Shown: one piece after another, positions 1-55,488 of the stretch
Position numbering within the stretch: position 1 is the first letter of the stretch
Layout: every line of letters begins with the position of its first letter
DNA from: Asterias rubens
Lineage: Eukaryota
Assembly: GCF_902459465.1 (NCBI RefSeq)
Contig: NW_022985694.1
Coordinates: forward strand, 310,001-373,852
Length of the DNA stretch: 63,852 bases
Reading direction: 5' to 3'
Position numbers and translations under genes: made by a program
Notes under the pieces: model-generated
What the model was told of the DNA's origin: nothing
Seen by the model: the letters and a program-made list of their open reading frames with translations, nothing else
Databases searched by the model: none

Positions 1-2
1 TT

Positions 3-1794: not shown

Positions 1795-3433
1795 ACATGC
1801 ATAATTAAACATAGAGTTGTCTAACAGAATAACAGTGTGCTGGTGATTGTCATTTGTAGACAGGATGCTGCACGAGCCTTACTACATTAATAAACATTTG
1901 TAGCTGTTCTGTTGATGCATACAGGTAAGTTATTTCACAACAATGTCTGAAAATGAGCTAATTAGCATTGTAGAGAGTAATAGAAAGATTGGTTTAGGGA
2001 GCCCAAGCTGCGCTCGCACTTAACGTTTGGGAGATGCTACTCTTTTTTGAAATTCAATGTTGGCATCTCTGCTACTGGAAAGATACTTGGATGGATCATC
2101 AAGCTTGAACTTCTTCAGTGAATGCGCATTCAAGTTCAACAGGAATTCCTGCTTTATATAACAAGACAGGAAGCCCTTGAATAGCTTCTCCTGCTCATCA
2201 TGTGCCTTGAAGATAAGTGGAACTTTTGTCTGGAACAAGCAGACATACGACTTGAGTTGTGGTAAAACAGACTTGTAGAGATGGAGGGTCAGCTGTGTCT
2301 TGTGAGAGTAATAAAAAAACTTCTCAACTATCCTCTTCTTCCTATCTCTGCCTTGCTCTGTGAGATTCTTTGCCGACAGTGTTCTCTGAATACTTTTTAT
2401 TCTGTCTCTTTCTGTTGTGTCCAAGCCATATTTGCGAACAAGTTGAAGGACCACTGCCTGATAGACAAACTTATTTGCAGGTGGAAAAAAACCATAGTAG
2501 AACAGTTGATAGGCATCGATCAATCGCAGTGTAGATACAGCCACATCATAGCATGACAACCATCTGTGCTCTATGAATTGGTCAGGCGTCGTAAATGATA
2601 ATCCAATCATCTCACAGATTTCCCTCAGTGCCTCTTTCAAATCAGGTGACCATTTGAAATCATTATGCAGATCACTGAATAACCGCTCCACAAACTTATC
2701 AAATGGCTTGCAGAACTTCTTTGTCGCGTTGTGGATGTGATGACATATGTCTCCATCTATGTCCACAAGATGGGGTGCCTTATTGTCCCGAATACGCTTC
2801 TCTAACCCTGTCTTGTTTCCGCGCATTACTGCACAGGAATCCATAAGAAGAGATACAAGATTCTTCCATGGAATTTCATGGTCGTGAAAAATTTGTACCA
2901 GCACATTGTAGAGTGACTCTGAATTAACTACAACCAGTTCCACTGATTGGAGGTGCTCTACGATGACACATTTGTCTTCTTCTGAGTAGTAGCTGACGAG
3001 TATGGCTAGCACTTTCTTGTTTCCGCTGCTTGTGGCTTCATCTATGTTCAGGGAGAATGAACTGCTCTTGATATTATGAAGTGTCTTCTCCATGACAGTT
3101 TTCTTTAAGCCGTACTGCATCTTGTATGAAGCTGTAGTCCTGTCCATGGTGAGGTCATCAAGGACTTTCTTATCCTTCACAAGCTCTTTAGCAGTGTCTA
3201 TTAGGACAGCCCCCGATTTCACGAAGCGCTGCGACGCGTCGCAAGTGCAAGTTGCGACCGGTTACACGTCGTAAGTTGCGATGCGTATATATCGATTTCA
3301 TGAAAGTTACGATGCGTCGGATACGTCGCAAGTTCCTTGACAACGAGGAAGAACACGTCGTAAAAAGTTGCGACTACCCAAAGGGTCGTCTTACGATGCG
3401 ATATCTCATTGATAGCGCACAAATACATGCAAA

Positions 3434-41140: not shown

Positions 41141-44100
41141 CTTACTATGTGTGCTTTGTTATGCTACTGTAAATAGCATCTAACATAGCTGACCTCTCCC
41201 CTTCCTTCAGCACTTGGCCCGTTTCCAGCTTTTGACATATGGCAGGAGGAAAATCTGGTAGGTTGTACCCCTTCAACCAGTTGCTAGATAGTATCCGTGT
41301 AGTTGATGCAGTCTGAATGAAAGTTGCACATGCAACATCAGAGGCTTCTTCAGGGCTATCAAAAGTAGTGCGAACAAAGGAATAAAAATACATTGTGATA
41401 TTTTTTAACAGAAAGTTTACTTTTTTAATGTCAGTCTCAATGTGTTTGTAGTGTTTTGTTATCAGTCCGGAGACAATTAAGGAAGGCCTGACACCTTGTT
41501 TTTGGGTTGCTCACTGATACGTTACTCTGCTGACAGATTTATTCACCATCCGAAGAAAACCTATTACAAACATAGATCCATAAATCTAATTAATTATCAT
41601 GCATGTAACGACTAATATTTAAGATTACTTTTCCACAAGTAGCCTTCCACCTCAGTTACACTAAACAAGTCTACATAACACTTAATTATAGGCCGGATAC
41701 ATATCCATACAACGTGAACTTCAGATCATGTGCTGTATATTGATCAACCATTGTTACCCAGTTTCACCCAAATTAACCCTCTAAATTTCTACTCACCAAC
41801 CGATCCGTTCCTCTATTTATTGGCAATCAAACTGGCTCCATGAGCGGGTCTCTCCAACTTCTTCCTCCACCCCGAATGTTGGATTTTACCCTCTCATCAT
41901 TGTCATACGTGACACTCATTTAGAGACCAACAACGAAAAAGGACGCAACAAATAGACCCCTCCGCCTAAACCGGCTAAAATTACTATGCTACACACTGAT
42001 TAATTACCAAACTCACCTATAATGAGCTGAATATTGAAAATAGCATAGTGAATATTTGTAATAATGTGACCAATTACATTACATACAAGAATAAAGACGA
42101 GATTGAGACCCAAATTCTTTCTCAGATAAAATAATCCAAAAAGTTATGCCTTTTTACATCCTTGACATTTGTATCCGTGCGACTACCGTTTAAGTACAAT
42201 GGCGCCCTCTATCGTTTACCAAAGTCATTCAACAAACTTTTTATCACCGTAATTAACGAAATGCCCATGGGTATCATAAAATATTGATTCATCACATTCT
42301 CCCCTACTAGTTCGATCAACTCCTGAGGATCGATTGAATGATTCAGCATCACATGAGGATAAAAATGTTCCCCTTAATCTTACAAATAAGCGAATCATAC
42401 TAATCACCAAAATACATTATGTATACCATCTTTCTCGCACCAACCCATATTTGCTTTATAGAACAGAGAAAACATTTGAACAAAAGTTACATGTATTTAA
42501 CCAAACTTTTTGTTTTTCTTTAAACCTACAAGAAAACACAATTAGCATATTATCATCTGACATTAATTATGCCCATATGCGAGATTCAAAGTACTTTGTT
42601 ATCTGACGAAGCGTTTTCTCATACAGTGCCCTTCCCGAAGTGTTCAGGTGGACCCCATCAAGGTTATACCGAGAGTTCTTTAACCCTCTGTGCTCCCACA
42701 ACCACCATTGGTCTTCCACAAAGGTCGACTGCTGAATAAGATCATTAAATCTCTCTGCTCGATCATTAAATTCTTCGAGTGAGACCTGACCACCCCGTAA
42801 ACCTCCTGTCCTAGGGAGTACTGGCAGAAACACTATTACCTCTGGGTTAATACCCCTCTTGGGTAACTCATACACAAAGTCACAGAGTGAAGAATGCACT
42901 TGGTTTGGATTAACATTTTTAGAACACAAATCATTTGTACCCAAGTCAATAATTAAAACTAAAGGATTTGCCTGCCGTAAATATTCATAATACTTCCTCG
43001 GCCTTGCCCGAATCCTACTTAAAGTGAGACCGCCCTCACCAATACATGTAACAGGAACTACCTTACTCTGTAACTCAATTTTAAACTGAGAACCTCGCTT
43101 CCTTTTCAAGCGTTTAACAAAACTGTGCCCAAAAAGGACAAAACTCATTTTCCGTTTAAGAACACAATACTACAAAAGGGGGAGGAAGCCCTATCAACCC
43201 ACTCCTTTACCACTTAATCAATTACAAATTTACACAATTTCCTAACACCATGTCAGTCCACTGGTAGCCAGAATACCCAGTGGTGCCCTACAGTAAGGTG
43301 TGCCATTGCGGAAACTGGATGCCCCAAGTCTTTCCAGCAAGACAACTCCCTGACCTTCTGCAATCACTGAGAACCCCCGCCACCAGAGTAAAGACAAATC
43401 ACTTAATAGCTGAACAGGGCAATCTGAATGGATTGCTGTGTTTACCCCTTGTAGTTCGTTGAGAACTTCTTAGGTGCTCAGATGCAGGGCAATGTAAACT
43501 TGGGGGCTCCCCTACTTCTACATTGCTCACGCCCTGTAAATCTTGAACCAGAGACTGATCCCCTGAAGGCTCAGTGTGTAGGACCTCCCAATCTGAATCT
43601 CCATCAGACTCATCACTCTCATTTTCTGTGTCACTTTCTGCAAAGGGATCTAACCGCAAGAGTTTTCTATTAACTACTCTTTCTGGGCCCCCCTTCAAGG
43701 GACGGATACGAAATACATCGCTATGCTCATTTATCCAAACGACCACATATGGGTCTCTTTCAAACTTGTCAGCCAGTTTGTGGCGTCCCTTGAATGCGCA
43801 TTTTCTGAGTAGAACATGGGACCCAATCTCAATAGGTTTGCTAGGTTTTACTTTCCTATCATAAGTAGCCTTGTTGCGATTGCAGCTTTTTGCTACTCGT
43901 TCCTTTACTAACTCACTAGCTCTAGAGAGCAAAGAAGATTGTTCTCTGACAAAATCTTGATCCCAATCGTTATCAGTTCTCCCCAACATCTGGTCTAGAG
44001 GTATCAATGGTTCCCTACCAAACATAAGCAAATACGGCGCTACTCCAGTGGTGCAATGCGGAGTAGCATTATACACAAATACAAGGTGCTGTAAAAGGTC

Positions 44101-47100
44101 AGGCCACCTCCGCCTATCCCGCTCATCCATGGACTTAATGAGTCCAAACAGAGTCCGGTTAAAGCGCTCTGTTTGAGCGTTCCCCTCGGGGTGGTAAGGA
44201 GTTGTTCTGGTCTTTTTCATGCCGTACAATGCACACAATTCCCTCACAACTTCCCCTTCAAAATTCCGACCCTGGTCGCTGTGCAAACGACAAGGTATTC
44301 CATATTTGGAAAACCACTGATTCCTCAAGACTTTGGCAACAGTTACTGCATGTTGATCCTTACACGGATATGCCTGTACAAATTTTGTATAGATGTCGGT
44401 CATGACCAGAACATCCTCATAGCCTCCTGCCCCTCGATCAATTTTGACAAAATCTATGGCTAGCACTTCGAGTGGTCGAAATGCTAAAAGGTGCCGCATT
44501 GGCACTTTTGCTTGAGGCTCTGACGCCTTAGAGATTACACATTGTTCACAATGACCGATATGCCGACGCACTGAACCAGCCATTTTGGGCCAAAACACCC
44601 GCCGCCTCAGGAGGGCACACGTTCTCACAACACCTTGATGCCCCCACCCATCATGACAACCCTCTAACACCCTCTGTTGTAAACTTGTGGGCATCAGTAC
44701 TTGATCTAGTTCACCATGCAATGGGTCCATGACACGACGATGTAAAACACCATCCTTTTCTATGAACCTGGGCCACTGCCACAACCACGATTTGATTTCT
44801 ACTGGCTCCTCCCTTTCAGCCTGAAAAACTTCATTCGGTTTCCAACCTTGATCCCAACGTTCCCAGATACACTTCAGCACTGGATCAGCCCTTTGTAGGG
44901 CAGACAGCTGCTCTGGTGTCCACGATGGGAAAATACCTGATTGACACTTAACCTGTGGAGGTCCAGCCTTTGTATCATGAGAAGTTAATACCTTATGTAC
45001 CTCTATATGTTGCAATGGAACCACTGTGGAGTGGACCTTACATTGCAGTATTTCCTCAACTTCCCCTGTTAGTGAGTGACTTGGGTTGCGACTTAGTGCA
45101 TCCGCTACACGATTACTAGCCCCTGATCTAAATTTCACATCAAAGGTAAAAGCTGCAAGTTGTGCTATCCAGCGCATTTCACATGCGCCCAACTTAGCTG
45201 TCTGTAGATAAGATAAGGGGTTATTATCTGTTAGCACTGTAAATGGTACCCCAAGGAGATAATCTCTAAATTTATCAACCACAGCCCATTTTAGGGACAA
45301 AAGCTCCAACTTAAAAGAACTAAAATCGGGGTACCTAGCTTCAGCCCCCCTCAGCCCCCGACTAGCAAATGCAACTGGATGTCTCTTGCCTTCCTTGTCG
45401 CACTGAGCTAAACAAGCTCCTAAACCCTGCAAGGAGGCATCTATCTCCAACACAAATGGCCTAGAAAAATCTGGATATGCAAGCACTGGTGCTTGCGTCA
45501 AGGTCTGCTTTAATGTATCAAAGGCCACCTGTGCCTCAGAACTCCAACAAAATGGCGAAGGTTTGGATCTCGAATTTCCCTTAGCCAGTGAGGGCACTAA
45601 AGCATGCAAGGGTGCGGCAATTTTTGAAAAGCCGGGTACAAAGCGCCGGTAATAACCGGCCAGACCAAGAAATGACCGCAATTGTGCCCCTGTCTTAGGT
45701 ATTGGCCAATCCTCAATTCTCTTAATCTTGTCATTGTCTACTGCAACACCCTCTGGCCCTACCACATGTCCTAAGTAAGACACATGCCTACGAAATAACT
45801 TGCACTTTGCACCCTTGATCTTAAGTCCAAAATCTGCCAATCTAGTGAAGACTCTGTCAAGCCTATCTATGTGTTCCTGTACCGTAGAGGAATATACCAG
45901 GATGTCATCTAAATAGATTAAAAGCTCTGATAAATTCAAGTCACCAAGGCACATCTCCATCACTCTCTGAAAGGTTCCAGGGGCATTTACCAGCCCGAAC
46001 GGCATTCTCGTATATTCGAACAGCCCAAAAGGTACTCTGAATGCAGTTTTACTTATTGATTCTGAGTCCATTACAACCTGATGGTATCCATGGGCTAAAT
46101 CTAATGAAGAAAAGTACCTTGCACCCTGGAGCGCCTCCAGCGACTCCTCGATACGAGGCAATGGAAATGAGTCTCGTACTGTTTTGGCATTAAGCCTCCT
46201 ATAATCAACACAAATCCTTAGCGACCCATCCTTCTTTTGGACCAATACAATGGGGCTGGCATAGGGGCTTTTACTCTTTTGTATGATACCTTGATCAAGA
46301 AACTTCTGGAGTAATTCCCTAACTTCTCTAAAATGTTGCGGCGGAATTCGTCTGTAAGGCTGGCTAATTGATTTATCATCAGTAGTGTCAATCTTGTGGG
46401 GAACCTTATCACAAAGTCCTAAATCCAACGAATTCTGCGAGAACACCTTATCATGTTTCTGAATTAATTGCACAATTTTGTCCTGGTCTTCCTTACACAA
46501 ATCAGCGCATAAATCAAGACTTAATCCATAAGGAAGTTGGTACTCTGACCCATCCTCAAACACATACAACTCTCTTGCCCGTGACTCTACAGCATCCCCC
46601 ATCTCAATGTCTAACTCATTGGAATCGACACCAGGGGCTCCCTCAGTACGACCAGTGTCTAAATATTCCCCAGACTCTGACAGACAATGATTCACTACAA
46701 CATGAACACAATCCACACCCGTCTCAAGTGCAACATTTGTCTTTGAAGATACCTCAGTCACGTAAGCAAGCTTTGTGTGTGGGGACAATTCAATCACCCG
46801 CATCCCTACATTCGCTACCAACACATTTACAGTTCTACCACTAACTACTGTACACAGATCGTAAACGCGGCAATTTCCATCTATGTTACTGGTTTGACCT
46901 CCACTATCTGCACAGCTAGATAGACCCTCAACAAGGACAGTTTGCCCGTCAAGGCTACTTTGATTAGCCTGAACATAGCAGGTTATACTACGCACTTCCC
47001 TAGGCAACAAATGTACTGGATTTCTACCTGTACGAGCACCCAGTGGGTCCCGTACACACTTATTTGCCCCATGTGACCCCTCAACTACTGGGTTTTTAGT

Positions 47101-50100
47101 CAGACTATACCAATTAATGGCCATTGCCCATGCATCTGCATCTTTTTGTTCTAAATCAACCTCTATATCCTTCAGCTTATGAAGGACATTGCAACCCAAC
47201 AATACTGGAAAACTTGTATGATTCCCTGCCTCACCCTTAGGAAATTCTTTGACCACCAAAAAATGTGCATCAATAGTCTGGTTATGTACCATCAGTGGGG
47301 CATGTATGTACCCCTCAATTGGTACCTCACTATTCCCTGCCCCAAACACACGCAGGTAAGTACCTAGAGTTTTGACTCCACTCAATTTCCCTGCAAGGTG
47401 ATCCCTATAAAAAGAGGCGCTAATCAGAGAAGTCTCTGCCCCGGTATCGAGGATACATTCCACTGGCACTCCAGCCAAAGCAATATGAGCCTTGGGGCTC
47501 TCTTTTACTAGACTGGTTAGTATGTCTTCATAAGACTTCTCTGTTACACTTCCAACTGGTGAGGCCTTTCCAGATTGTTCCTCTGTCACTCGGCCTACAG
47601 TGGCAGAGAAGTCTGGTTTCCCGACCCTGTGTTTTGTGCATCTCCCATAGCCTGCCCTTGCCCCCCATTCGCTTTTTCGTGAGCCATACGAAGTTTACAC
47701 TCATGCTTCATGTGACCTGGGCGTTTACAATAAAAACAGCGAATCGGGGGCCTGTCCTGCCGCCTTCCTGAGCCTTCATACATGCCCTGGCTAGTTACCG
47801 TCCCACTTTGTTTCACCACTGCTTGCATAAGCGTAGTTATCTGTTCCTGCTGTTTGCAAAGAGTTTCTTGCTGTGCTTGCATACATTTAAGAATCTCTTG
47901 TTGCTGTTGCAACACTGTTTGCAACTGTGTGTCCCCTTGGGACTTGTTAACTACTTGGTTAATGCTAACATTAGCATCAGCCACTGGCTCGTCACTATTC
48001 AGATCATTTTCTGTACCTAGGTGATGCAAGTGCACACTTGCACCACGTCGAGAACCCCGAGGGTACTCCTCTAGATCTCTGAACAACTCGCGAGCTGAAT
48101 CCCTCATTTCGGTAAAATCCTGATCCGGTTCAGCCAACTCTAAGCGCCTCAGCTCAAGCCTGACACCTTGATTCCTTGCGCCCGCCACAAACTGCCCAAT
48201 CAAAACCCTATCTCTCAAACCCTTCAATGCATCTTTCTCTGTTTCTGTAGCAACCTCTAAAATCCGATCATGCATTCGCATGAGCGAGCGGGAAAAATCC
48301 ATAAGGGATTCGTCTTCCCTTTGCCGTCTTTCAAAAAGGGCCTTCTGAAGGGCCTGTACTGACTCCTCTGCCCCAAACTGACGCCGAAGGAGTTTTTTTA
48401 GCGCTGCATAGTCACCCGTTACATTCTCATTGTGGCATTTGATCTCATCGCGAGCAACACCCGCGAGGTGGTGGACAACCACTTTAGCCCTATCTACCTC
48501 AGGGATACGACATTGTTGCAGATAAACCTCTGCATCTTCAAGCCATTCAATAATGGTCGGATCTCCCGGTTTACTAGGCCTACCATAGTATTTACCCAAC
48601 TTCAAGGGCCTCTGAATGACATTCTTCGGTTTATCTTGCCGAAGTGCCTCGGTCAGCCCTGCGACCAAGCGCGTCACAAGATCAGCCTCTGGTACGGCCA
48701 TTGTGAGTCAAGAAATTATGATTCAGTTATTGAAGGCTAACCAATTTGTACAATCAAAATTAAGTCATAAACACCTAAACCCAGGTAAATTTGCTTCAAC
48801 AGGACCGGTTGGTTTTCACTAGGAATAAAACTAACACCTATACATTATCAGGTAAAATTTACTGACTAACAAACTATATATAGGCCTATCTAAATCCTAC
48901 CAACAATGTGCGAATTGAATCGCATAATCCCACCTCACTGCTGATCAACCAGTTCAGTCCAGTTCAGTTCAGAGTCATTAGATTTCACATGTACATGCAC
49001 ATGTAAAGGTTGAGTTCGTAGCTCCAAAAGGGTCCAACAGCACTACCGCCACCGGGCTTCTCCACTTGCACTGCCACAGGCTATTCCAGTCGCTGTCCTC
49101 CACTTGGATCCTCACTCCCTCTTCAGAACTCGGCCAATGCCCTCAATGTACTGGACGACAACCAGCAAAGCAGCAGATTAAAGCAACCCCATCCGTGTTA
49201 CCAAATTTGTAGTGTTTTGTTATCAGTCCGGAGACAATTAAGGAAGGCCTGACACCTTGTTTTTGGGTTGCTCACTGATACGTTACTCTGCTGACAGATT
49301 TATTCACCATCCGAAGAAAACCTATTACAAACATAGATCCATAAATCTAATTAATTATCATGCATGTAACGACTAATATTTAAGATTACTTTTCCACAAG
49401 TAGCCTTCCACCTCAGTTACACTAAACAAGTCTACATAACACTTAATTATAGGCCGGATACATATCCATACAACGTGAACTTCAGATCATGTGCTGTATA
49501 TTGATCAACCATTGTTACCCAGTTTCACCCAAATTAACCCTCTAAATTTCTACTCACCAACCGATCCGTTCCTCTATTTATTGGCAATCAAACTGGCTCC
49601 ATGAGCGGGTCTCTCCAACTTCTTCCTCCACCCCGAATGTTGGATTTTACCCTCTCATCATTGTCATACGTGACACTCATTTAGAGACCAACAACGAAAA
49701 AGGACGCAACAAATAGACCCCTCCGCCTAAACCGGCTAAAATTACTACGCTACACACTGATTAATTACCAAACTCACCTATAATGAGCTGATTATTGAAA
49801 ATAGCATAGTGAATATTTGTAATAATGTGTACAATTACATTACATACAAGAATAAAGACGAGATTGAGACCCAAATTCTTTCTCAGATAAAATAATCCAA
49901 AAAGTTATGCCTTTTTACATCCTTGACATTTGTATCCGTGCGACTACCGTTTAAGTACAATGGCGCCCTCTATCGTTTACCAAAGTCATTCAACAAACTT
50001 TTTATCACCGTAATTAACGAAATGCCCATGGGTATCATAAAATATTGATTCATCACATGTTTATTAAACTGCTTTATGGGGGGGAATGAGCATATAAGAA

Positions 50101-53100
50101 TACCATGAACTTCAAAAGCATTTTTTTAAAGATCTCATCCCGTGTTCAGTCTAGCAATGACCTTTACAATAAAAATCAAGTGTCATGGGTCTTGAAAAGT
50201 TGTTTCCTTGTCTTTGGCTTAATTCAGACTGAAAGGTCTGAAAGATGTTAGCAAACAGACTGTAGTTGCTCAAGTTGGTGAATTCAAACTTTTTAAGAAC
50301 CGTTAGTTCCCAGGTAAATGCATCATTGGCTCTTGTTAAAAAAAATCATTTTTTTTACACGGTAATCTTGTATAACTTGTCTTTGGGTTCAATAAGTGAA
50401 AAAAGTAGTTTTAACAAATTGTTCTTACCCGATGGTGTCCTTGATCTGGACTTTTGAGTTGTTTTCCACCTCCTCATGGTCATCAGCATCAACCCAATCT
50501 TCAAAATCACGGTCCCAAAGCTGTGTTTGGCAGGCACTTAGTCCAAATAGTTCACATGCCTTTTTCTTAATGTCTTCAACTTTCACTATCTCCCCACTGT
50601 TCAGGTCAAAGTTAACCCTTCTATTTTTTTCTCCATAAATAAACAAGTATCTATTTAAAAAGAAAAATAAAAGAAATCATTCGGAATCTCCATTTGTTTT
50701 ATTCAGATTTTTTTGTATTTGCCTCCTTTTTTTTAAATGTACCAAAACTGAGTTTAAAGCAGCTGGGCACTGACAAAGAACTATCATTTTGCTGTCTGCT
50801 GGAAACCTATGTGTGTTCTTTAACAAAGCAATACATGCACAACTGAAATTTATTTTTAATGATTACACTATGGGGACACTACATGTATGTGATGACGTAG
50901 TACAACAACCTCACCCATGTTACTATGATAGACCCCTAAAGGATAATGATCTACAAGTTGAGATACTTCCAGGACAGAGAACTCATCAGTCAATGTTAGT
51001 ACATAGCCAGAGATGTGACGTATATATTCACTGTCCCTAGTGTTTTGGGTTACAAGATACACTTTGCCATCAATCAAGCAACACATCTCTATAACACCAA
51101 ACTCCACTAGTCCATCTTGACTAAATCCTACAGCAACTGCGAGACCATTGCAATACCAGGTACCAGCACACAACACTTTCTTCGCAGTGTACACTGACTC
51201 CCCATTGACTAGTGGTTGCAGAATGTTTTGTATGGATTTCAACAAAATCCTCATTGGAACAACATGACCACAGGTGTGATCAACCATATCTTGCATGAGA
51301 AATGTTTTCTTTGTTCTCATCCAGGCCTGGTAGTACTCATGCCTCATTGCAAGCGTCTTACTCATGTTTCGTCTGTTTTTTGACCGGTTGGCGAGTTCCT
51401 TGAAGTACAAGTGTTTCCCCTCATACCTCAATGTCCAGCAATTTACGAGTGGTCCAAACTTCAATAGCAACTTTGGATAGTGAACTATGTAATGGAACTT
51501 TGGCTTCATTGAATTATCTGGAAACTCGATGAAGTAACTCTGTAGGAACATTGCAATCAGGTCTGCAAGGAATTCAGTTAGCGGGACATCTACTTGATAT
51601 GAAGTACAGACTTGCACTACATCCCCAAGAAGAAGTAACACTGACCACACACTATCATCTTCTGGAACTCTATGACCTACCATAAGTGGTAAAAGGCGAA
51701 GGAAACACCATGCTTGTACAGCCTTTTGCTTCACTTTGAATTTTCCTAGTTGGGATGCCATTTTGGATGGTTTGTTTGTTTTGTCGGTACCTCTGTACGG
51801 AAAGTTTTCCACTTGGTCATTTAGAAATTCCAGTGTAAAGTATTCTTGTCCGACACAATGACGAATGACATTTTCAATAACATCTGGCACTATACCCTCA
51901 AAGAAGTCATGAGCAATATCTGGTGGTAATCCATGTACAACATGAAAATTGTCCAGTTGGTGAAGTGGACTTACTCTCTTGATTCCATACACATGTGCTA
52001 CAGCTGGCATTTGAGTCGCTAAATCTGATTGTTGGTTGTATGAATCCTTTGTTCTAAGAACGAGATCTGTGTCACGGAAATGGTCTTTCAAAGTGTGTTT
52101 TGTGATCATGCAGTATCTACACATACGATCTGTGTTGAAACTCTCTTGGAAGCCTCCGATTCCATGTGCAGCCAAGTTGTCCGCCACAACCATCGAAAGA
52201 GATCCCTTGAAGTTGTACATCATGCCATCCTTTTCAACATTTAATCCAACAGATTCCAATTGTTTCATATCTTGTATGAAAGGGGCCAGTACCTGTAGTA
52301 TTCCGTATTCTACCAATACTTCTGATGGACAAAGTATAACAAGTTGAATAGAGCAAAGCTTGGAGCGAAATTCTGGGGGAAGATTACCAAGACAAAAGTA
52401 GAAAGCCGAGAATTTCAGCTGTTTTACTTTATTTCCTATAGGATTAGCAACTGTGAAGTCATCATAATATAATTGGACTTCAATAGTTGAATGATTCTGT
52501 GAGAACAACTTGTTGTCTTTGTAGAAGGAACCATCGCAAAAATCTTTGATAAACCCCTCACTTTGATGTCCATTTACCACTTCAGCAAAGATGTCATCTT
52601 TGTTTAAAAGGGATTTCAGAGTCTCCAAAACACTGACATACTGCATAGACTTCACCTTACCATTTTGTCTTCCCAAAACATACTCAACAGGCTCAACAAA
52701 GTCAAAATTATTCTTAACAAAGGTGTTAAGTTGGTTGGTTTTCCTGAACAAATTAAAAGACTCTTCCATGTCTGATTGGCTGAAAATTTCTTGTAATTCT
52801 TCAGCTCTCACTTGAGGAAGCAAATCTTGAGCTCTCTTGTGCAGTTGCTCCCTTGCTTGTTCAATTATGTTTTCTACTTCATCTGCAACATGACTGCATA
52901 TTTGATCACATACTTTAAACTGCTCTCGCAAGCCTAATATAAAACTGGAAGCTACTCGATCAGTATCTACAGGATTTTGTGCTTCTTCATTTGGCAAAAA
53001 TCCTTCCTCTACCTCTTCATCGCTACTGGCTTCTGATAGTACACCATCTTCCTCATTCATTCCTTGCCCCTCGAAACCATTTTCTGGTGCCAGTCTTTCA

Positions 53101-55488
53101 TACCTGCCCCAAAATGCAGAGTGCATTTTCTTCACATGAAGCTGGAATGATCTAACACTGCGGAAAACCCTCTGACAACCTTGTAAACCACATGTTATAA
53201 GTGACCTTGGACCATTGTGAATGTACCTGTAGTGATTCAACAGTCTCAGTAAATTTTGTGATCTATATTCACATTGACTGCATATAAAATCTTCCATTGT
53301 CTGAGTTTTCTTGTAGCAAAAACCAATTCGCTTTTCATTTTTAATTAAATCTTTGTCAGTGTTGCTGCTTCCTTATGATTGGCAAGCAAGATAAAAATAC
53401 AGCTGAGGACAAATTGAGCCTTCAAAACATTGCATTATCCCCACCCCCTTTAAGTTTAATTTTTAACTACACTGTTTTAGTAGTCTTAGAGGAGACCGTC
53501 AAATTAGAAAGGTGACTGTGTTGATTGAGAAAGATTGAAGATGGTGTCCGATTGTTAATGTTGTTTGATGGAGACTGACCTGTAACATGAAAATGAAATG
53601 TGAAATGAAATAAAAAAAAACAAAAAACAAAAATGAGAATGGCCTATAATCTGGACGCCATCGTTTTTTAAATTCCAACAATTAACTATTCAAAGTTCAA
53701 ATAAAATGCTTTTAAAGGACTTTGAAAAAAAAATTGATAATTAAAATTGTATGTCATAATTTTTTGACATATTGTTCAGTTTGACATATTGTTCAGTTTT
53801 TTTCTAGAAATTTTGTTAACAATGAGATAAAAATTATGCCTTTTGAAAAATGCATTTTGCTAATCAAGGTCAAAGGTAATATTTTTACACATGTACATTA
53901 TTATACATGCACATAATAAGCACACGCATATGTACATACTTTTTAAGTTTTCATCCTTAACCGCCATTGTTCAAATAATCATAATTCAAACTGTGCGCGT
54001 GCCCATCCCAACCTTTCTAGAAATATTGCTAATGTACATCTTAAGCTAACATTGAGATAAAAATTATACATATAAAAAAAATGACCTTGCTAATCAAGGT
54101 CAAATGTAATTTTTTTGCGTAATTAATGTTTTTGTGGTACATAATATAATGTTGATTTAGTTTTTATGAAATCTGGGACATATTAAGAGCTTTAAACTGG
54201 TGTAAAAATTATCACTGTAGGCCCCTAGGTGTTTTATTTTTAGAGATGGTTATCAAAACATGACAATAGGTCATTCCGTGTCAATTCAACACGCTTTTGG
54301 ACTTGACCAACACAGATTGAAACGTTACTTGGTGTGCTGAATGGACTTATTGAGAAACCACCAGAACAGACATTTTATGTCATTCAGATAATTACTTTTT
54401 GAGATACAGCTTAACAAACTTTTGACTAATTAGCTTGACCCTCTATGTTTGGACAACCATATCTCCAAAAGTAAAGCACCCACATAAATAAATTTTCCAC
54501 TATTTTAAAGCTCTTGACATGGCCTTCATTTAATAAAATAAGGAGAAAAAATTCCACGTAGCACAACAAAATTACGCACAAATGTGACATTTGCCCTTGA
54601 TTTGCGAAAATGTATATTTTTCAAAATGCGTAATTTTTTCATTGTTAGCTCATGATATAAGCAACATTTTCAGAAAAATTTAGGATGGGCACTCTTACAG
54701 TTTTGGAGTTATGATAATATGAACACAGGCTATAAAGGTTAAAAACTTTAAATGAATGTACATATGCAGGTGTACATACATGTATACAGCTGTACATGTA
54801 CATCATGTACACGTACATCATGTACACGTACATCATGTACACGTACATCATGTACACGTGTATACAGTAGGCCTATAATAGTTAGTACTGTACTTTAAAA
54901 ACATGTCCCATGACATGACTCATGTGCAGTGGCATAATTAGAAGGGGTGGGGGCAGGGCGGCCTCCACCCCCTCCTCCTCCCCCCCCCCCCCAACCCTCA
55001 TTGAAATCATAAAAAATGTTTTTTTAAAATGTGTAAATCAAGTAACATATTAAATGGCTTGCACTTCTTGGGCCCCAAAAGTAAAATCTTTGCCCCCACA
55101 TGCCCCCCCCCCCACCCCCCAAAAAATTGTGCGTAATTTTGTTAAATGCTAAGTGGAATTTTTTTCTCCGTCAAGAGCTTTAAAATAGTGGAAAGTGTTA
55201 TGTGGGTGCTTTACTTTTGGAGATATGGTTGTCCAAACATAGAGGGTCAAGCTAATTAGTCAAAAGTTTGTTAACCTGTATCTCAAAAAGTAATTATCTG
55301 AATGACATAAAAATTCAGTTCTGGGGGTTTCTCAGTAAGTCAAATCAGCACACCAAATTTTGTGTCGATCCGTGAAGGTCAGGTCCAAAAGCCTGTTGAA
55401 CTGACATGGAATGACCCATAAGCCAAATTCAAATCTTGGCGGTTTAGAGAATAACAAAATTAGAAACTAACCTTGCCTTCCAAGACAT
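28252..55488 (-). CDS. SAMD3-like EnSpm accessory protein, 491 aa; exons 55488-55472, 50650-50429, 41355-41146, 40254-40155, 39995-39621, 30398-30215, 29778-29690, 28530-28252
   Basis: All seven introns are GT-AG with matching phases; 1,476 nt with no internal stop. Motifs recalled from SAMD3-like proteins: WDRDFEDWVD, YPTSEQY, WKYRLQYKFANSR, TLADRR...YPWL...EFNRL, FYVFNLAYP. Exon 1 is assigned on phase fit only. Confidence 0.8.
33043..33632. mobile_element. Foldback element with back-to-back tRNA-derived segments and a nested MITE (~33259-33548); mirrored at ~55948-56537
   Basis: Inverted ends GCCCTACACCGATGTGATAAGCACTG; A/B-box-like motifs on both strands. The nested element has GG[G/T]CCCAATTTCATAAA TIRs. 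Confidence 0.65.
34162..35310. mobile_element. Non-autonomous element with long imperfect inverted arms; mirrored at ~54270-55420
   Basis: GGTCATTCC[A/G]TGTCA[G/A]TTCAAC ends; internal arm TTTTGACTAATTAGCTTGACCCTCTATGTTTGGACAACC is inverted at ~35095-35165. Confidence 0.65.
34721..34790 (+). repeat. 15-bp tandem repeat (CGTGTACATGATGTA) x~4; mirrored at ~54795-54860
   Basis: Direct reading of the sequence. Confidence 0.9.
35978..37504 (+). pseudogene. Duplicated last two exons of the SAMD3-like gene in the deletion derivative (35978-36066, 37226-37504)
   Basis: Reverse-complement copies of 29778-29690 and 28530-28252; upstream exons 2-6 are deleted. Confidence 0.85.
40808..41135 (+). mobile_element. 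tRNA-derived SINE, 5'-truncated
   Basis: B box GGTTCGAGTCC, GTGTCCTTGAGCAAGACACTTAAC core, 3' stem-loop and (TAT)n tail. Flanked by TTATACTT direct repeats at 40800-40807 and 41136-41143. Confidence 0.8.
41447..42296 (-). repeat. 3' LTR
   Basis: Direct repeat of 49208-50057; I saw about four substitutions by eye. Confidence 0.97.
42297..42310 (-). other. Polypurine tract
   Basis: CTAGTAGGGGAGAA on the minus strand, directly abutting the 3' LTR. Confidence 0.8.
42567..43148 (-). CDS. SGNH/GDSL-family hydrolase (esterase/lipase), Gypsy ORF3, 193 aa
   Basis: Block I FGHSF (Ser), block II GEGG, block III DLGTND, block V DGVH (Asp/His). Intact ORF between pol and the PPT. Confidence 0.9.
   Translation of the reverse strand: MSFVLFGHSFVKRLKRKRGSQFKIELQSKVVPVTCIGEGGLTLSRIRARPRKYYEYLRQANPLVLIIDLGTNDLCSKNVNPNQVHSSLCDFVYELPKRGINPEVIVFLPVLPRTGGLRGGQVSLEEFNDRAERFNDLIQQSTFVEDQWWLWEHRGLKNSRYNLDGVHLNTSGRALYEKTLRQITKYFESRIWA
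43399..47589 (-). CDS. pol: Gypsy Pol polyprotein (protease, RT, RNase H, integrase)
   Basis: LDTGAETS, YLDD, RNase H EIDAS, HHCC (HDGWGH..CEQC), LAIDF / HSDQG / ERFN and a GPY/F-like DPYVV. 1396 aa uninterrupted. Confidence 0.97.
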   Translation of the reverse strand: MTEEQSGKASPVGSVTEKSYEDILTSLVKESPKAHIALAGVPVECILDTGAETSLISASFYRDHLAGKLSGVKTLGTYLRVFGAGNSEVPIEGYIHAPLMVHNQTIDAHFLVVKEFPKGEAGNHTSFPVLLGCNVLHKLKDIEVDLEQKDADAWAMAINWYSLTKNPVVEGSHGANKCVRDPLGARTGRNPVHLLPREVRSITCYVQANQSSLDGQTVLVEGLSSCADSGGQTSNIDGNCRVYDLCTVVSGRTVNVLVANVGMRVIELSPHTKLAYVTEVSSKTNVALETGVDCVHVVVNHCLSESGEYLDTGRTEGAPGVDSNELDIEMGDAVESRARELYVFEDGSEYQLPYGLSLDLCADLCKEDQDKIVQLIQKHDKVFSQNSLDLGLCDKVPHKIDTTDDKSISQPYRRIPPQHFREVRELLQKFLDQGIIQKSKSPYASPIVLVQKKDGSLRICVDYRRLNAKTVRDSFPLPRIEESLEALQGARYFSSLDLAHGYHQVVMDSESISKTAFRVPFGLFEYTRMPFGLVNAPGTFQRVMEMCLGDLNLSELLIYLDDILVYSSTVQEHIDRLDRVFTRLADFGLKIKGAKCKLFRRHVSYLGHVVGPEGVAVDNDKIKRIEDWPIPKTGAQLRSFLGLAGYYRRFVPGFSKIAAPLHALVPSLAKGNSRSKPSPFCWSSEAQVAFDTLKQTLTQAPVLAYPDFSRPFVLEIDASLQGLGACLAQCDKEGKRHPVAFASRGLRGAEARYPDFSSFKLELLSLKWAVVDKFRDYLLGVPFTVLTDNNPLSYLQTAKLGACEMRWIAQLAAFTFDVKFRSGASNRVADALSRNPSHSLTGEVEEILQCKVHSTVVPLQHIEVHKVLTSHDTKAGPPQVKCQSGIFPSWTPEQLSALQRADPVLKCIWERWDQGWKPNEVFQAEREEPVEIKSWLWQWPRFIEKDGVLHRRVMDPLHGELDQVLMPTSLQQRVLEGCHDGWGHQGVVRTCALLRRRVFWPKMAGSVRRHIGHCEQCVISKASEPQAKVPMRHLLAFRPLEVLAIDFVKIDRGAGGYEDVLVMTDIYTKFVQAYPCKDQHAVTVAKVLRNQWFSKYGIPCRLHSDQGRNFEGEVVRELCALYGMKKTRTTPYHPEGNAQTERFNRTLFGLIKSMDERDRRRWPDLLQHLVFVYNATPHCTTGVAPYLLMFGREPLIPLDQMLGRTDNDWDQDFVREQSSLLSRASELVKERVAKSCNRNKATYDRKVKPSKPIEIGSHVLLRKCAFKGRHKLADKFERDPYVVVWINEHSDVFRIRPLKGGPERVVNRKLLRLDPFAESDTENESDESDGDSDWEVLHTEPSGDQSLVQDLQGVSNVEVGEPPSLHCPASEHLRSSQRTTRGKHSNPFRLPCSAIK
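47581..47622 (-). promoter_or_regulatory. Putative -1 ribosomal frameshift signal (G GGA AAC + hairpin)
   Basis: Heptamer at 47622-47616 in the gag frame, 7-nt spacer, then stem CTCTGCCACT/AGTGACAGAG. pol is in the -1 frame and open across the heptamer. Confidence 0.75.
47595..48701 (-). CDS. gag: Gypsy Gag (capsid + CCHC zinc knuckle), 368 aa
   Basis: CFYCKRPGHMKHEC knuckle; position between the PBS and pol. Confidence 0.92.
   Translation of the reverse strand: MAVPEADLVTRLVAGLTEALRQDKPKNVIQRPLKLGKYYGRPSKPGDPTIIEWLEDAEVYLQQCRIPEVDRAKVVVHHLAGVARDEIKCHNENVTGDYAALKKLLRRQFGAEESVQALQKALFERRQREDESLMDFSRSLMRMHDRILEVATETEKDALKGLRDRVLIGQFVAGARNQGVRLELRRLELAEPDQDFTEMRDSARELFRDLEEYPRGSRRGASVHLHHLGTENDLNSDEPVADANVSINQVVNKSQGDTQLQTVLQQQQEILKCMQAQQETLCKQQEQITTLMQAVVKQSGTVTSQGMYEGSGRRQDRPPIRCFYCKRPGHMKHECKLRMAHEKANGGQGQAMGDAQNTGSGNQTSLPL
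49185..49203 (-). other. Primer binding site
   Basis: TGGTAACACGGATGGGGTT, 4 nt after the 5' LTR, complementary to a tRNA CCA end; the isoacceptor is uncertain. Confidence 0.75.
49208..50057 (-). repeat. 5' LTR
   Basis: See 3' LTR. Confidence 0.97.
50868..53297 (-). CDS. EnSpm/CACTA-type (animal) transposase, 809 aa, single exon
   Basis: Two N-terminal C2H2-like fingers, QLYYDDF..NPIG, FYFCLGNLPP..RS, ADNLAAH..GGF.ESF..CRYC, PPDIAHD..EG and KPKFHY..HYP...FGPL..WT.RYEGKH. No stops. Confidence 0.93.
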   Translation of the reverse strand: MEDFICSQCEYRSQNLLRLLNHYRYIHNGPRSLITCGLQGCQRVFRSVRSFQLHVKKMHSAFWGRYERLAPENGFEGQGMNEEDGVLSEASSDEEVEEGFLPNEEAQNPVDTDRVASSFILGLREQFKVCDQICSHVADEVENIIEQAREQLHKRAQDLLPQVRAEELQEIFSQSDMEESFNLFRKTNQLNTFVKNNFDFVEPVEYVLGRQNGKVKSMQYVSVLETLKSLLNKDDIFAEVVNGHQSEGFIKDFCDGSFYKDNKLFSQNHSTIEVQLYYDDFTVANPIGNKVKQLKFSAFYFCLGNLPPEFRSKLCSIQLVILCPSEVLVEYGILQVLAPFIQDMKQLESVGLNVEKDGMMYNFKGSLSMVVADNLAAHGIGGFQESFNTDRMCRYCMITKHTLKDHFRDTDLVLRTKDSYNQQSDLATQMPAVAHVYGIKRVSPLHQLDNFHVVHGLPPDIAHDFFEGIVPDVIENVIRHCVGQEYFTLEFLNDQVENFPYRGTDKTNKPSKMASQLGKFKVKQKAVQAWCFLRLLPLMVGHRVPEDDSVWSVLLLLGDVVQVCTSYQVDVPLTEFLADLIAMFLQSYFIEFPDNSMKPKFHYIVHYPKLLLKFGPLVNCWTLRYEGKHLYFKELANRSKNRRNMSKTLAMRHEYYQAWMRTKKTFLMQDMVDHTCGHVVPMRILLKSIQNILQPLVNGESVYTAKKVLCAGTWYCNGLAVAVGFSQDGLVEFGVIEMCCLIDGKVYLVTQNTRDSEYIRHISGYVLTLTDEFSVLEVSQLVDHYPLGVYHSNMGEVVVLRHHIHVVSP

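What the first reader, a model, noticed from the sequence alone, without database searches (positions are those of the whole stretch)
42567..43148. Gypsy retrotransposon carries an intact SGNH/GDSL hydrolase in the env position
Seen: a 193-aa third ORF between integrase and PPT, inside a young element (LTRs differ at about 4 of 850 positions by eye, TSD intact), with all four SGNH blocks and a Ser-Asp-His triad. It has no obvious signal peptide or TM segment, so it is not an Env. Known: SGNH esterases occur in ORF1 of some CR1/L2/RTEX LINEs and in some tyrosine-recombinase retroelements, where lipid or membrane binding has been proposed. I do not know this as a standard Ty3/Gypsy feature. Inference: an independently captured accessory enzyme that may help particles engage membranes, deacylate a host factor, or substitute for Env in cell-to-cell spread.
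Basis: partly seen in the sequence, partly recalled or inferred. Interest (0 to 1): 0.85.

Follow-up and report, generated by a model that had tools for sequence, protein, structure and literature searches.

The report
Gypsy retrotransposon with an esterase gene
A young, intact Ty3/Gypsy retrotransposon carries a small SGNH-type esterase as its third gene, where a retrovirus would have env. The gene is real and kept by selection across a clade of marine elements, but this arrangement was already described in rotifer LTR elements in 2017.

Summary
Window 41447-50057 (minus strand) is an 8,611-bp Ty3/Gypsy element. Its 850-bp LTRs differ at 4 positions and it has a 4-bp target duplication. gag, pol (PR-RT-RNaseH-INT, -1 frame) and a 193-aa ORF3 (42567-43148) are all open.

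ORF3 is a stand-alone, basic SGNH hydrolase with no signal peptide or transmembrane segment. The AlphaFold model has pLDDT 92.6. The best fold matches are PAF acetylhydrolase Ib and sialate O-acetylesterases. The Ser9, Gly40, Asn72, Asp164 and His167 columns are 95-100% conserved in 55 relatives.

ORF3 is not a one-off capture. Sister elements 57-80% identical in ORF3 have the same gag-pol-ORF3 order. ORF3 diverges as slowly as pol and more slowly than gag. Relatives 32-37% identical follow the pol of much more distant Gypsy-like elements, and a 30% relative lies in a bivalve tyrosine-recombinase retroelement. The family is large (1,065 clusters at E<=1e-10) and has a typical Gly-His-Ser first block.

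The likely role is an intracellular acyl-esterase or membrane-binding accessory protein, not an Env. This step is inferred.

GDSL ORF3s in bdelloid LTR elements were published in 2017, and SGNH genes in LINEs, Penelope-like and Ngaro elements earlier. I rate it a new member of a known kind, of moderate interest.

The parts
41443..41446 (.). Target-site duplication, 3' side of the element (TGTT on the + strand)
   Evidence: Identical 4-mer directly flanks both LTRs.
41447..42296 (-). 3' LTR, 850 bp with TG...CA ends
   Evidence: blastn against the other LTR gives 99.53% identity, 4 mismatches and no gaps. Termini read. No further copy or solo LTR in the window.
42297..42305 (-). Polypurine tract (9 purines) abutting the 3' LTR
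   Evidence: Read directly from the sequence.
42567..43148 (-). ORF3: 193-aa stand-alone SGNH/GDSL hydrolase, 22.4 kDa, pI 9.7. Catalytic codons: S9 43122-43124, G40 43029-43031, N72 42933-42935, D164 42657-42659, H167 42648-42650.
   Evidence: ORF listed. Pfam Lipase_GDSL_2 E 1.8e-6. AF2 pLDDT 92.6, pTM 0.90. Foldseek best matches are PAF-AH Ib and sialate O-acetylesterases, E about 4e-8, TM 0.67-0.71. Motif conservation. Residue coordinates checked.
43149..43398 (-). 250-nt pol-ORF3 spacer. A pyrimidine-rich run ending in TAG (roughly 43171-43190) sits about 23 nt before the ORF3 ATG, and the ATG has A at -3. This is a candidate splice acceptor only.
   Evidence: Read directly. Not clearly conserved in sister elements. 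No GTRAGT donor in the leader or gag.
43399..47589 (-). pol ORF, 1396 codons listed, frame open from 47694. Domains: PR 47188-47502, RT 45763-46242, RNase H 45148-45546, integrase 44188-44691. No internal stops.
   Evidence: Pfam RVT_1 2.3e-34, RT_RNaseH_2 1.4e-29, Integrase_H2C2 6.3e-15, rve 2e-11, weak aspartyl-protease matches. DTG and YLDD motifs and zero stops.
47616..47622 (-). Candidate -1 frameshift heptamer GGGAAAC, in X_XXY_YYZ register with gag, 25 nt before the gag stop
   Evidence: pol is in the -1 frame and overlaps gag by 100 nt. The same -1 arrangement occurs in L002, L007 and L008.
47595..48701 (-). gag, 368 aa, with one CCHC zinc knuckle
   Evidence: Pfam PNMA 3.2e-9, Retrotrans_gag 1.4e-6, zf-CCHC 2.3e-4.
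49186..49203 (-). Candidate primer-binding site, starting TGG, 4 nt after the 5' LTR
   Evidence: Read directly. The matching tRNA was not identified, and the window holds no tRNA gene.
49208..50057 (-). 5' LTR, 850 bp with TG...CA ends
50058..50061 (.). Target-site duplication, 5' side of the element (TGTT on the + strand)

Best explanation
The region is a recently inserted, apparently complete Ty3/Gypsy LTR retrotransposon (8,611 bp, minus strand). Its third gene encodes a small, basic, cytosolic SGNH-fold esterase with a Gly-His-Ser first block.

**Shown**
- The fold and the conserved Ser-Asp-His triad with its oxyanion residues.
- The absence of a secretion or membrane anchor.
- The same gag-pol-ORF3 layout in sister and in distant Gypsy-like elements.
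- Sequence constraint on ORF3 equal to that on pol.

**Inferred**
- The protein is made inside the cell that expresses the element, perhaps from a subgenomic or spliced RNA.
- It acts there as an acyl- or acetyl-esterase on a lipid or other O-acylated substrate, or as a charge-driven binder of acidic membranes.
- This would help Gag/RNA particles assemble, traffic or cross an internal membrane barrier.
- The model is the ZfL2-1 LINE ORF1p esterase, which is catalytically active and binds negatively charged liposomes.

It is an accessory enzyme of the replication cycle, not an envelope protein. The gene is an old module shared among retroelement classes, not a fresh capture by this copy.

The confidence figure is a blend: about 0.95 for the identity of the element and of ORF3 as an SGNH hydrolase, about 0.9 for selective maintenance, and about 0.35 for the intracellular esterase or membrane-binding mechanism.
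For: **Element anatomy:**

**Fold:** AF2 pLDDT 92.6. Foldseek against PDB finds PAF-AH Ib (3dt6, 1wab, 1bwp), sialate O-acetylesterases (7pzh, 6njc) and Bacteroides GDSL acylhydrolases at E 3e-8 to 1e-6, TM 0.66-0.71. The family profile against PDB sequences gives 2hsj 6.6e-10, 4hf7 1.5e-9, PAF-AH 1.3e-7 and ZfL2-1 esterase 4c1b 4.7e-7 over nearly its full length.

**Catalytic columns in 55 relatives:**
- G7: 54 of 55
- H8: 53
- S9: 54
- G40: 52
- N72: 55
- D164: 53
- H167: 54

**Constraint:** ORF3 dN is 0.28-0.41, pol 0.29-0.33 and gag 0.42-0.56, with dS saturated. Where computable, dN/dS is about 0.14-0.18.

**Linkage to Gypsy-type pol:**
- L002, L007 and L008 (DNA held) and the P0005 and P0002 contigs (gene tables only).
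- Five copies of the P0315 family, 37% identical in ORF3.
- L011 and L012, 32-36% identical.

**Other properties:**
- Median pI of the family is 9.5, and 91% of members are above 8.
- No signal peptide or TM segment.
- ZfL2-1 esterase activity and its charge-dependent liposome binding are reported in PMC3905857.
Against: - No expression, protein or activity data exist for this ORF3 or any relative found here.
- The substrate is unknown. The best fold matches include both lipid (PAF) and sugar (sialate, xylan, peptidoglycan) deacetylases.
- The mode of ORF3 expression is unresolved. The candidate acceptor is not clearly conserved, and no canonical donor was found.
- The dN/dS values rest on saturated dS between distant families. 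The only near-identical second copy (L010) differs at 2 ORF3 sites, both non-synonymous, which is too few to interpret.
- The His in block I is unusual, and its effect on catalysis is unknown.
- The bdelloid study found no departure from neutrality for its GDSL ORF3s within genomes (PMC5408684).
Confidence: 0.55

Rival explanations
1. ORF3 is mainly a binding module. It binds acidic membranes or RNA through its basic surface, and catalysis is dispensable, as in SGNH-like domains that have become non-catalytic binders such as the OSK domain of Oskar.
For: The family is strongly basic, with median pI 9.5. ZfL2-1 esterase binds liposomes even with active-site mutations (PMC3905857). One distant relative, P0227, also hits the Pfam OSK domain.
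Against: The nucleophile, the oxyanion residues and the acid-base pair are kept in 52-55 of 55 diverse relatives. Pure binding would not require that. The window protein has no OSK match at E<=0.1.
Confidence: 0.15
2. ORF3 counteracts a host control system by removing an acyl or acetyl group from a host lipid mediator, protein or glycan that restricts the element. This would be an anti-defence enzyme, not an assembly factor.
For: The closest folds are small-substrate deacetylases (PAF-AH Ib, sialate O-acetylesterase). Related ORF3s occur in unrelated retroelement classes, both Gypsy and tyrosine-recombinase elements, which fits a generally useful host-directed activity.
Against: No target is known, and nothing in the sequence points to one. 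The evidence does not separate this from the membrane-assembly model.
Confidence: 0.15
3. ORF3 replaces Env for spread between cells. It would be an extracellular or particle-surface esterase acting like a receptor-destroying or entry enzyme.
For: It sits in the env position. The SGNH fold is used by sialate O-acetylesterases, which are among the fold matches (7pzh, 6njc), and by phage tail-spike esterases.
Against: There is no signal peptide, TM segment, lectin or fusion domain. The catalytic Ser is at residue 9 of a compact single domain. The authors of PMC5408684 reached the same conclusion for the bdelloid GDSL ORF3s.
Confidence: 0.07
4. ORF3 is a neutral passenger: a host gene fragment, or a chance ORF carried by this one copy.
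For: The two differences from the second copy L010 are both non-synonymous. The single-sequence Pfam score is below the gathering threshold.
Against: The same ORF, intact, occurs in the same place in many diverged families. Its dN equals that of pol while dS is saturated. The catalytic residues are near-invariant.
Confidence: 0.03

Closest known systems
GDSL esterase/lipase ORF3 of bdelloid-rotifer Vesta LTR retrotransposons (Rodriguez, Kenefick and Arkhipova 2017, PMC5408684)
   Same: An LTR retrotransposon with gag and pol plus a downstream ORF3 that encodes a GDSL/SGNH hydrolase. The catalytic residues are intact, and there is no TM or coiled-coil segment. The same ORF type also occurs in other retroelement classes. 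The same functional ideas were proposed: membrane interaction and an auxiliary role, not an Env.
   Different: - The element lineage differs. Vesta, Juno and TelKA carry a dUTPase between PR and RT, and this pol has no dUTPase match.
- The named pol relatives here are echinoderm, fish and frog Ty3/Gypsy proteins.
- The bdelloid ORF3s showed no departure from neutrality within genomes, whereas here between-family constraint equals that of pol.
- Whether the two ORF3 groups are the same SGNH subfamily could not be tested, because no Vesta sequence could be fetched.
SGNH-hydrolase ORF of Ngaro/DIRS-type tyrosine-recombinase retroelements (Goodwin and Poulter 2004, as cited in PMC9210276)
   Same: A small stand-alone SGNH ORF carried as an extra gene by a retroelement. 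A 30%-identical member of this ORF3's family (P0024) lies in a repeat-bounded 7.4-kb unit in Mercenaria mercenaria. That unit also carries RT/RNase H and a tyrosine-recombinase-type ORF (L009).
   Different: The window element uses a DDE integrase and LTRs, not a tyrosine recombinase with split repeats. In L009 the SGNH ORF precedes the other ORFs instead of following them.
Esterase domain of LINE ORF1p (CR1, L2 and RTEX clades; ZfL2-1 structure 4c1b, PMC3905857)
   Same: A retroelement-encoded SGNH esterase with a conserved triad. The family profile matches 4c1b over almost its whole length at E 4.7e-7. ZfL2-1 gives the only experimental model: an active esterase that binds acidic liposomes.
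   Different: - It occupies the ORF1 position and is fused to a coiled coil, whereas here it is a free single domain after pol.
- By profile score, 4c1b is no closer than PAF-AH Ib or bacterial GDSL proteins, and it is absent from the top 50 fold matches.
- The LINE-specific His/Ser pair (H191/S228) was not assessed.
PAF acetylhydrolase Ib catalytic subunits (1wab, 3dt6, 1fxw)
   Same: The best solved-structure matches, at E about 4e-8, TM 0.67-0.71 and 15-19% identity. These are small cytosolic SGNH acetylhydrolases.
   Different: They are cellular enzymes with a longer N-terminus. Sequence identity is low, and there is no evidence of direct descent.

Membership tests
SGNH/GDSL hydrolase superfamily | Block I: nucleophile Ser in a G-x-S motif at the end of the first strand | tested here: met
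   G7-H8-S9. The model has strand 3-7 followed by helix 9-18. Ser is kept in 54 of 55 relatives. The middle residue is His, not Asp, in 108 of 129 full-length representatives.
SGNH/GDSL hydrolase superfamily | Block II Gly and block III G-x-N-D (oxyanion hole) | tested here: met
   G40 in 52 of 55, G70 in 52, N72 in 55 and D73 in 54.
SGNH/GDSL hydrolase superfamily | Block V D-x-x-H (acid and base of the triad) | tested here: met
   D164 in 53 of 55 and H167 in 54 of 55, just before the last helix.
SGNH/GDSL hydrolase superfamily | Three-layer alpha/beta/alpha SGNH fold | tested here: met
   AF2 pLDDT 92.6, pTM 0.90. 167 PDB matches at E<=1e-3. All but one of the 50 listed are SGNH/GDSL-type enzymes or scaffolds built on one; the exception is an SGNH-like O-acetyltransferase domain. 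TM is up to 0.71.
SGNH/GDSL hydrolase superfamily | Significant match to curated sequence profiles | tested here: inconclusive
   The window protein alone scores 29.0 bits on Lipase_GDSL_2, below the 32.9 cut-off. However, 20 of 21 relatives match at E<=0.01, the best at 4.3e-10, and the family profile hits solved SGNH proteins at 6.6e-10.
SGNH/GDSL hydrolase superfamily | Hydrolytic activity | not testable with these tools
   No biochemical data for this family were found in the papers searched.
Ty3/Gypsy LTR retrotransposon | LTRs with TG...CA ends, target-site duplication, PBS and PPT | tested here: met
   850-bp LTRs, a TGTT duplication, a TGG-starting PBS candidate and a 9-nt PPT.
Ty3/Gypsy LTR retrotransposon | gag with CCHC, and pol in the order PR-RT-RNase H-INT | tested here: met
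   Pfam domain order. gag and pol are in a -1 frame relation with a slippery heptamer.
Ty3/Gypsy LTR retrotransposon | RT groups with Ty3/Gypsy in a phylogeny | tested here: inconclusive
   The best named relatives are annotated as Ty3 or Gypsy polyproteins from echinoderms (61-64%), fish and frogs (52-58%). No tree was built and no Gypsy clade was assigned. No chromodomain was found.
Bdelloid Vesta-type LTR elements with GDSL ORF3 | GDSL ORF3 after pol with intact catalytic residues and no TM or coiled coil | tested here: met
   compared with the description in PMC5408684.
Bdelloid Vesta-type LTR elements with GDSL ORF3 | dUTPase domain between PR and RT (lineage marker of Vesta, Juno and TelKA) | tested here: not met
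   No dUTPase family among the Pfam matches of pol at E<=0.1. The marker is described in PMC5408684. The element is therefore not a member of that lineage, only the same kind of arrangement.
Bdelloid Vesta-type LTR elements with GDSL ORF3 | ORF3 belongs to the same SGNH subfamily as Vesta1 GDSL | not testable with these tools
   The accessions are given in the paper, but no tool here fetches them.
LINE ORF1p esterase class (ZfL2-1 type) | Esterase in ORF1, upstream of RT, joined to a coiled-coil dimerisation domain | tested here: not met
   ORF3 is downstream of pol. It is a single compact domain of 193 aa with no extra helical segment.
LINE ORF1p esterase class (ZfL2-1 type) | Specific sequence kinship with LINE esterases, closer than with cellular SGNH proteins | tested here: not met
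   4c1b scores E 4.7e-7, behind bacterial GDSL proteins (about 1e-9) and level with PAF-AH (1.3e-7).
Ngaro/DIRS retroelement SGNH ORF | Element encodes a tyrosine recombinase and has split or inverted repeats | tested here: not met
   The window element has a DDE integrase (rve) and LTRs. A 30% homologue of ORF3 does lie in such an element (L009).
Retroviral or errantiviral Env | Signal peptide, transmembrane anchor, fusion machinery | tested here: not met
   Maximum KD(19) is 0.93. The fold starts at residue 3, and the length is only 193 aa.

The most novel reading that the evidence does not exclude
The Gly-His-Ser SGNH protein may be a pan-retroelement accessory module of marine animals. It would be passed between Gypsy-like and tyrosine-recombinase elements and kept because it gives particles an Env-independent way to deal with cell membranes, for example reaching the germline or neighbouring cells. 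That would make it a third route to 'infectivity' besides captured viral env genes. The evidence that does not exclude this:
- The family has more than 1,000 clusters.
- ORF3 similarity is discordant with pol similarity: L011 and L012 are 45% identical in ORF3 but 26% in pol.
- A member lies in a bivalve tyrosine-recombinase element.
Probability: 0.12. Interest if true: 0.75.

Novelty: new member of a known kind. Interest (0 to 1): 0.45.

Why it matters
Extra genes in LTR retrotransposons show how these elements gain new abilities. Until now the esterase case rested on a few low-copy rotifer families, with no sign of selection.

The same arrangement appears here in an ordinary Ty3/Gypsy lineage of marine animals. 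It is found in many diverged families and is as constrained as pol. It belongs to a large, distinct SGNH subfamily that also occurs in tyrosine-recombinase retroelements.

This strengthens the view that lipid or acyl-ester chemistry is a recurrent, useful part of retroelement biology, seen in LINE ORF1p, Penelope-like elements, Ngaro and now Gypsy. It also provides a well-defined protein family for structural and expression studies. It does not open a new category.

Tried and rejected
- **Single-sequence search of solved structures:** gave only spurious repeat-protein matches. The family profiles were needed.
- **Splicing model for ORF3:** the pyrimidine tract plus AG before the ATG in the window is not clearly shared by L002, L007 or L008. 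No GTRAGT donor lies in the leader or gag. I left it as a possibility only.
- **Within-family selection test:** the second copy L010 is 99.68% identical over 1,562 nt and has only 2 ORF3 differences. The six contigs encoding P0003 differ at 0-2 sites. Both are too few to use.
- **YN00 dN/dS:** failed on these divergent pairs, and NG86 dS was saturated or undefined for most pairs. Only dN comparisons and two ratios are reported.
- **Viral contig scan (IMG/VR):** found no relative.
- **Prokaryotic genome scan:** gave only weak, partial, generic SGNH matches in Bacteroidia MAGs, so there is no sign of a close bacterial source.
- **Host species:** not identified. The window has no tRNA genes, and the protein sources are masked for window-encoded proteins. 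The nearest named pol relatives are echinoderm, and the nearest named ORF3 relatives are bivalve.
- **DNA for several informative contigs** (P0002, P0005, P0315, P0301, P0023) was unavailable, so only their gene tables were used.
- **Report submission:** Nothing else was changed except a sentence explaining that value.
Full report

Yes. The finding's coordinates hold a 193-codon ORF on the minus strand (42567-43148), with an ATG start and no internal stop. It lies inside an LTR retrotransposon on that strand.

- blastn of the two flanks gives one 853-nt direct repeat with 4 mismatches and no gaps.
- Trimmed to TG...CA ends, the LTRs are 41447-42296 and 49208-50057, 850 bp each.
- They are flanked by an identical 4-bp duplication, TGTT on the plus strand, at 41443-41446 and 50058-50061.
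- A TGG-starting primer-binding candidate follows the 5' LTR after 4 nt (49186-49203). A 9-purine tract abuts the 3' LTR (42297-42305).
- The window holds no other copy of the LTR, gag, pol or ORF3.

**2. The element.**

- gag (47595-48701, 368 aa) matches PNMA and Retrotrans_gag and has a CCHC knuckle.
- The pol ORF (43399-47589) has aspartyl protease, RT (E 2.3e-34), RNase H, the integrase zinc domain and the integrase core, in that order. It contains DTG and YLDD motifs and no stops.
- pol is in the -1 frame relative to gag and overlaps it by 100 nt. A GGGAAAC heptamer sits in the X_XXY_YYZ register 25 nt before the gag stop (47616-47622).
- The -1 arrangement recurs in three sister elements.
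- No chromodomain or dUTPase was detected.

The copy therefore looks complete and young, with LTR divergence of 0.47%.

**3. What ORF3 is.**

- The single protein matches Pfam Lipase_GDSL_2 at E 1.8e-6. At 29.0 bits it is below the gathering score of 32.9.
- 20 of 21 relatives match the same family, the best at 4.3e-10.
- An AlphaFold2 model built on the 21-sequence alignment is confident, with mean pLDDT 92.6 and pTM 0.90.
- Foldseek against the PDB returns mostly SGNH-fold enzymes.
  - First come the PAF acetylhydrolase Ib catalytic subunits (3dt6, 1wab, 1bwp; E about 4e-8, TM 0.67-0.71).
  - Then come sialate O-acetylesterases (7pzh, 6njc) and Bacteroides GDSL acylhydrolases.
- Against predicted viral structures, it matches the esterase modules of phage tail proteins and giant-virus GDSL proteins. 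No animal-virus protein appears among the 50 matches listed.
- The four blocks sit where the fold requires:
  - G7-H8-S9 at the end of strand 1
  - G40
  - G70-x-N72-D73
  - D164-x-x-H167 before the last helix
- The protein is 22.4 kDa with pI 9.7. It has no hydrophobic stretch (maximum KD(19) 0.93) and no room for a signal peptide.

**4. Is it a fixed part of the element or a passenger?**

The protein search found 27 relatives. Wherever enough flanking sequence was on record, the close ones sit directly after a Gypsy-type pol.

| Relative | ORF3 identity to window | Context |
|---|---|---|
| P0005 | 61% | gag (381 aa), pol (1381 aa), short ORF, ORF3 |
| P0003 | 65% | six contigs; L002 reads gag-pol-ORF3 |
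| P0011 (L007) | 57% | gag-pol-ORF3 |
| P0012 (L008) | 58% | pol-ORF3-LTR-gag-pol |
| P0002 | 80% | ORF3 follows the integrase part of pol |

In the P0002 copy, pol is interrupted once by a nested Bel/Pao-type element.

- Between these families, pol is 61-65% identical to the window's pol, and ORF3 is 57-65% identical.
- Non-synonymous divergence of ORF3 (0.28-0.41) equals that of pol (0.29-0.33). It is lower than that of gag (0.42-0.56).
- Synonymous sites are saturated. The two computable ratios are 0.14 and 0.18.
- ORF3 was therefore present in the common ancestor of this clade and has been kept under purifying selection.
- A second copy of the window's own family occurs in a coastal metagenome (L010, 99.68% over 1,562 nt). 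It is too similar to be informative.

**5. The wider family.**

A profile search of 1.84 billion representative proteins found 4,095 clusters at E<=1e-3 and 1,065 at E<=1e-10. Almost all are stand-alone proteins of 185-220 aa.

- Among 129 full-length representatives, 108 have Gly-His-Ser in block I.
- In a 55-sequence alignment spanning 22-65% identity to the window protein, the catalytic columns are kept in 52-55 sequences.
- Three further residues (R13, R113, N135) are kept in 51-55 sequences.
- The median pI is 9.5.

Contexts that could be read:

- **P0315 family** (37% identical): five copies in one assembly, all gag-pol-ORF3. pol is called as one gene in two copies and as two genes in three. 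No DNA was available to see why.
- **L011:** a 1585-aa RT-RNase H-integrase ORF followed by a 32%-identical ORF3.
- **L012:** RNase H and integrase ORFs, with the ORF3 start overlapping the pol end.
- **P0024** (30% identical) in the clam Mercenaria mercenaria: lies in a 7.4-kb repeat-bounded unit with an RT/RNase H ORF and an ORF matching the phage-integrase SAM-like domain. This is a tyrosine-recombinase (DIRS/Ngaro-type) retroelement.
- **P0301:** has yet another, unclear context.

L011's pol is only about 28% identical to the window's. L011 and L012 are 45% identical in ORF3 but 26% in pol. The module has therefore either been in LTR elements for a very long time or has moved between lineages.

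The ORF3s sampled from Gypsy-type elements are only slightly closer to each other (31-37% between the two groups) than to the tyrosine-recombinase-linked one (28-31%).

Named relatives of ORF3 are all bivalve 'uncharacterized proteins' (Mercenaria, Ruditapes, Saccostrea), apart from one MAG-labelled protein. The nearest named pol relatives are echinoderm (61-64%), followed by fish and frogs.

No relative was found in IMG/VR. Only weak, partial, generic SGNH matches were found in prokaryotic genomes.

**6. How it most likely works.**

*Shown:*
- An SGNH fold with a conserved triad.
- No export signal.
- A basic surface charge across the family.
- Selective maintenance.
- Physical linkage to pol.

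*Inferred:*
- A cytosolic acyl- or acetyl-esterase, and/or a binder of acidic membranes, that helps the element's particles or RNPs at a membrane-dependent step.
- The only experimental model is the ZfL2-1 LINE ORF1p esterase (PDB 4c1b). It hydrolyses esters, can take long acyl chains and binds negatively charged liposomes through surface charge (PMC3905857).
- The family profile matches 4c1b over nearly its full length (E 4.7e-7). This is no better than its matches to PAF-AH Ib or bacterial GDSL proteins, so the analogy is functional and does not show close kinship.

How ORF3 is expressed is open. It has a good start context and a pyrimidine tract plus AG 23 nt upstream. That signal is not clearly conserved, and no canonical donor was found.

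The rivals are a non-catalytic binding module, an anti-host deacylase and an Env substitute. Each is weighed in its own section, and the last is the least likely because nothing directs the protein out of the cell.

**7. Comparison with what is known.**

- SGNH esterases in CR1, L2 and RTEX LINEs and in Penelope-like elements are established (PMC3905857), as is the SGNH ORF in Ngaro elements (PMC9210276).
- Rodriguez, Kenefick and Arkhipova (2017, PMC5408684) described GDSL esterase ORF3s in bdelloid Vesta LTR retrotransposons.
  - They noted intact catalytic residues and the lack of TM or coiled-coil segments.
  - They noted sharing with Athena/Terminon elements.
  - They proposed membrane-related auxiliary roles.
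  - A 2017 review repeats the point (PMC5718144).
- I found no paper reporting the arrangement in other animal Gypsy lineages. The 2026 survey of env-carrying Gypsy elements does not mention it.
- The window element is not a Vesta relative, since it has no dUTPase, and it is not a LINE or Ngaro element.

It is best filed as a new member of the known kind 'LTR retrotransposon with an SGNH ORF3'. What is added here:
- evidence of strong constraint;
- the breadth of the family;
- the Gly-His-Ser signature;
- the link to a tyrosine-recombinase element.

**8. Verdict.**

Interest is moderate, at 0.45.

The decisive test of ORF3's contribution to the element's propagation is listed under referred steps and is not described.

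Noticed in passing
window 50868-53297 (-): An intact 809-aa ORF lies 0.8 kb beyond the element's 5' LTR. It has a C2H2-like N-terminus and no Pfam family above threshold (only a weak 'aberrant zinc finger' hit, E 0.008). It may be a transposase-like or domesticated gene.
   Followed up: partly
window 5282-5758 (+): A 158-aa ORF matches the DDE_Tnp_4 endonuclease (E 1.3e-12). It is a fragment of a PIF/Harbinger-type transposase.
   Followed up: partly
window 16846-19644 (-): Three consecutive or overlapping ORFs (329, 371 and 260 aa) have no Pfam match. This may be another mobile element or a long exon set.
   Followed up: partly
window 1-4000: GC content is about 45%, against 32-41% in the non-element parts of the window, and AT skew is marked in the first 2 kb. 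ORFs 21-1391(+) and 2020-3222(-) have no convincing Pfam match.
   Followed up: no
L001, L003, L008 (whole contigs): Metagenome contigs read pol-ORF3-LTR-gag-pol. This means either tandem element copies sharing one LTR, or assembly running through the LTR.
   Followed up: no
L009 9529-17176 (Mercenaria mercenaria CM038759.1): A repeat-bounded 7.4-kb unit has the SGNH ORF first, then a 433-aa ORF, RT/RNase H and a tyrosine-recombinase-type ORF. The SGNH position differs from the published Ngaro layout, where it follows the recombinase.
   Followed up: partly
protein P0227 (2341 aa, representative library): A giant protein with six stretches matching the ORF3 profile also hits the Pfam OSK domain. 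It is a tandem SGNH-repeat architecture of unknown origin.
   Followed up: partly
protein P0266: A 26%-identical family member is labelled 'MAG: SGNH/GDSL hydrolase family protein [Sedimenticola sp.]' on a 6.4-kb contig. It may be a eukaryotic contig binned into a bacterial MAG, or a true bacterial relative.
   Followed up: no
P0002 contig (gene table only): In the closest sister family (ORF3 80% identical), pol is interrupted once by a nested Bel/Pao-type element, while ORF3 downstream stays intact.
   Followed up: no
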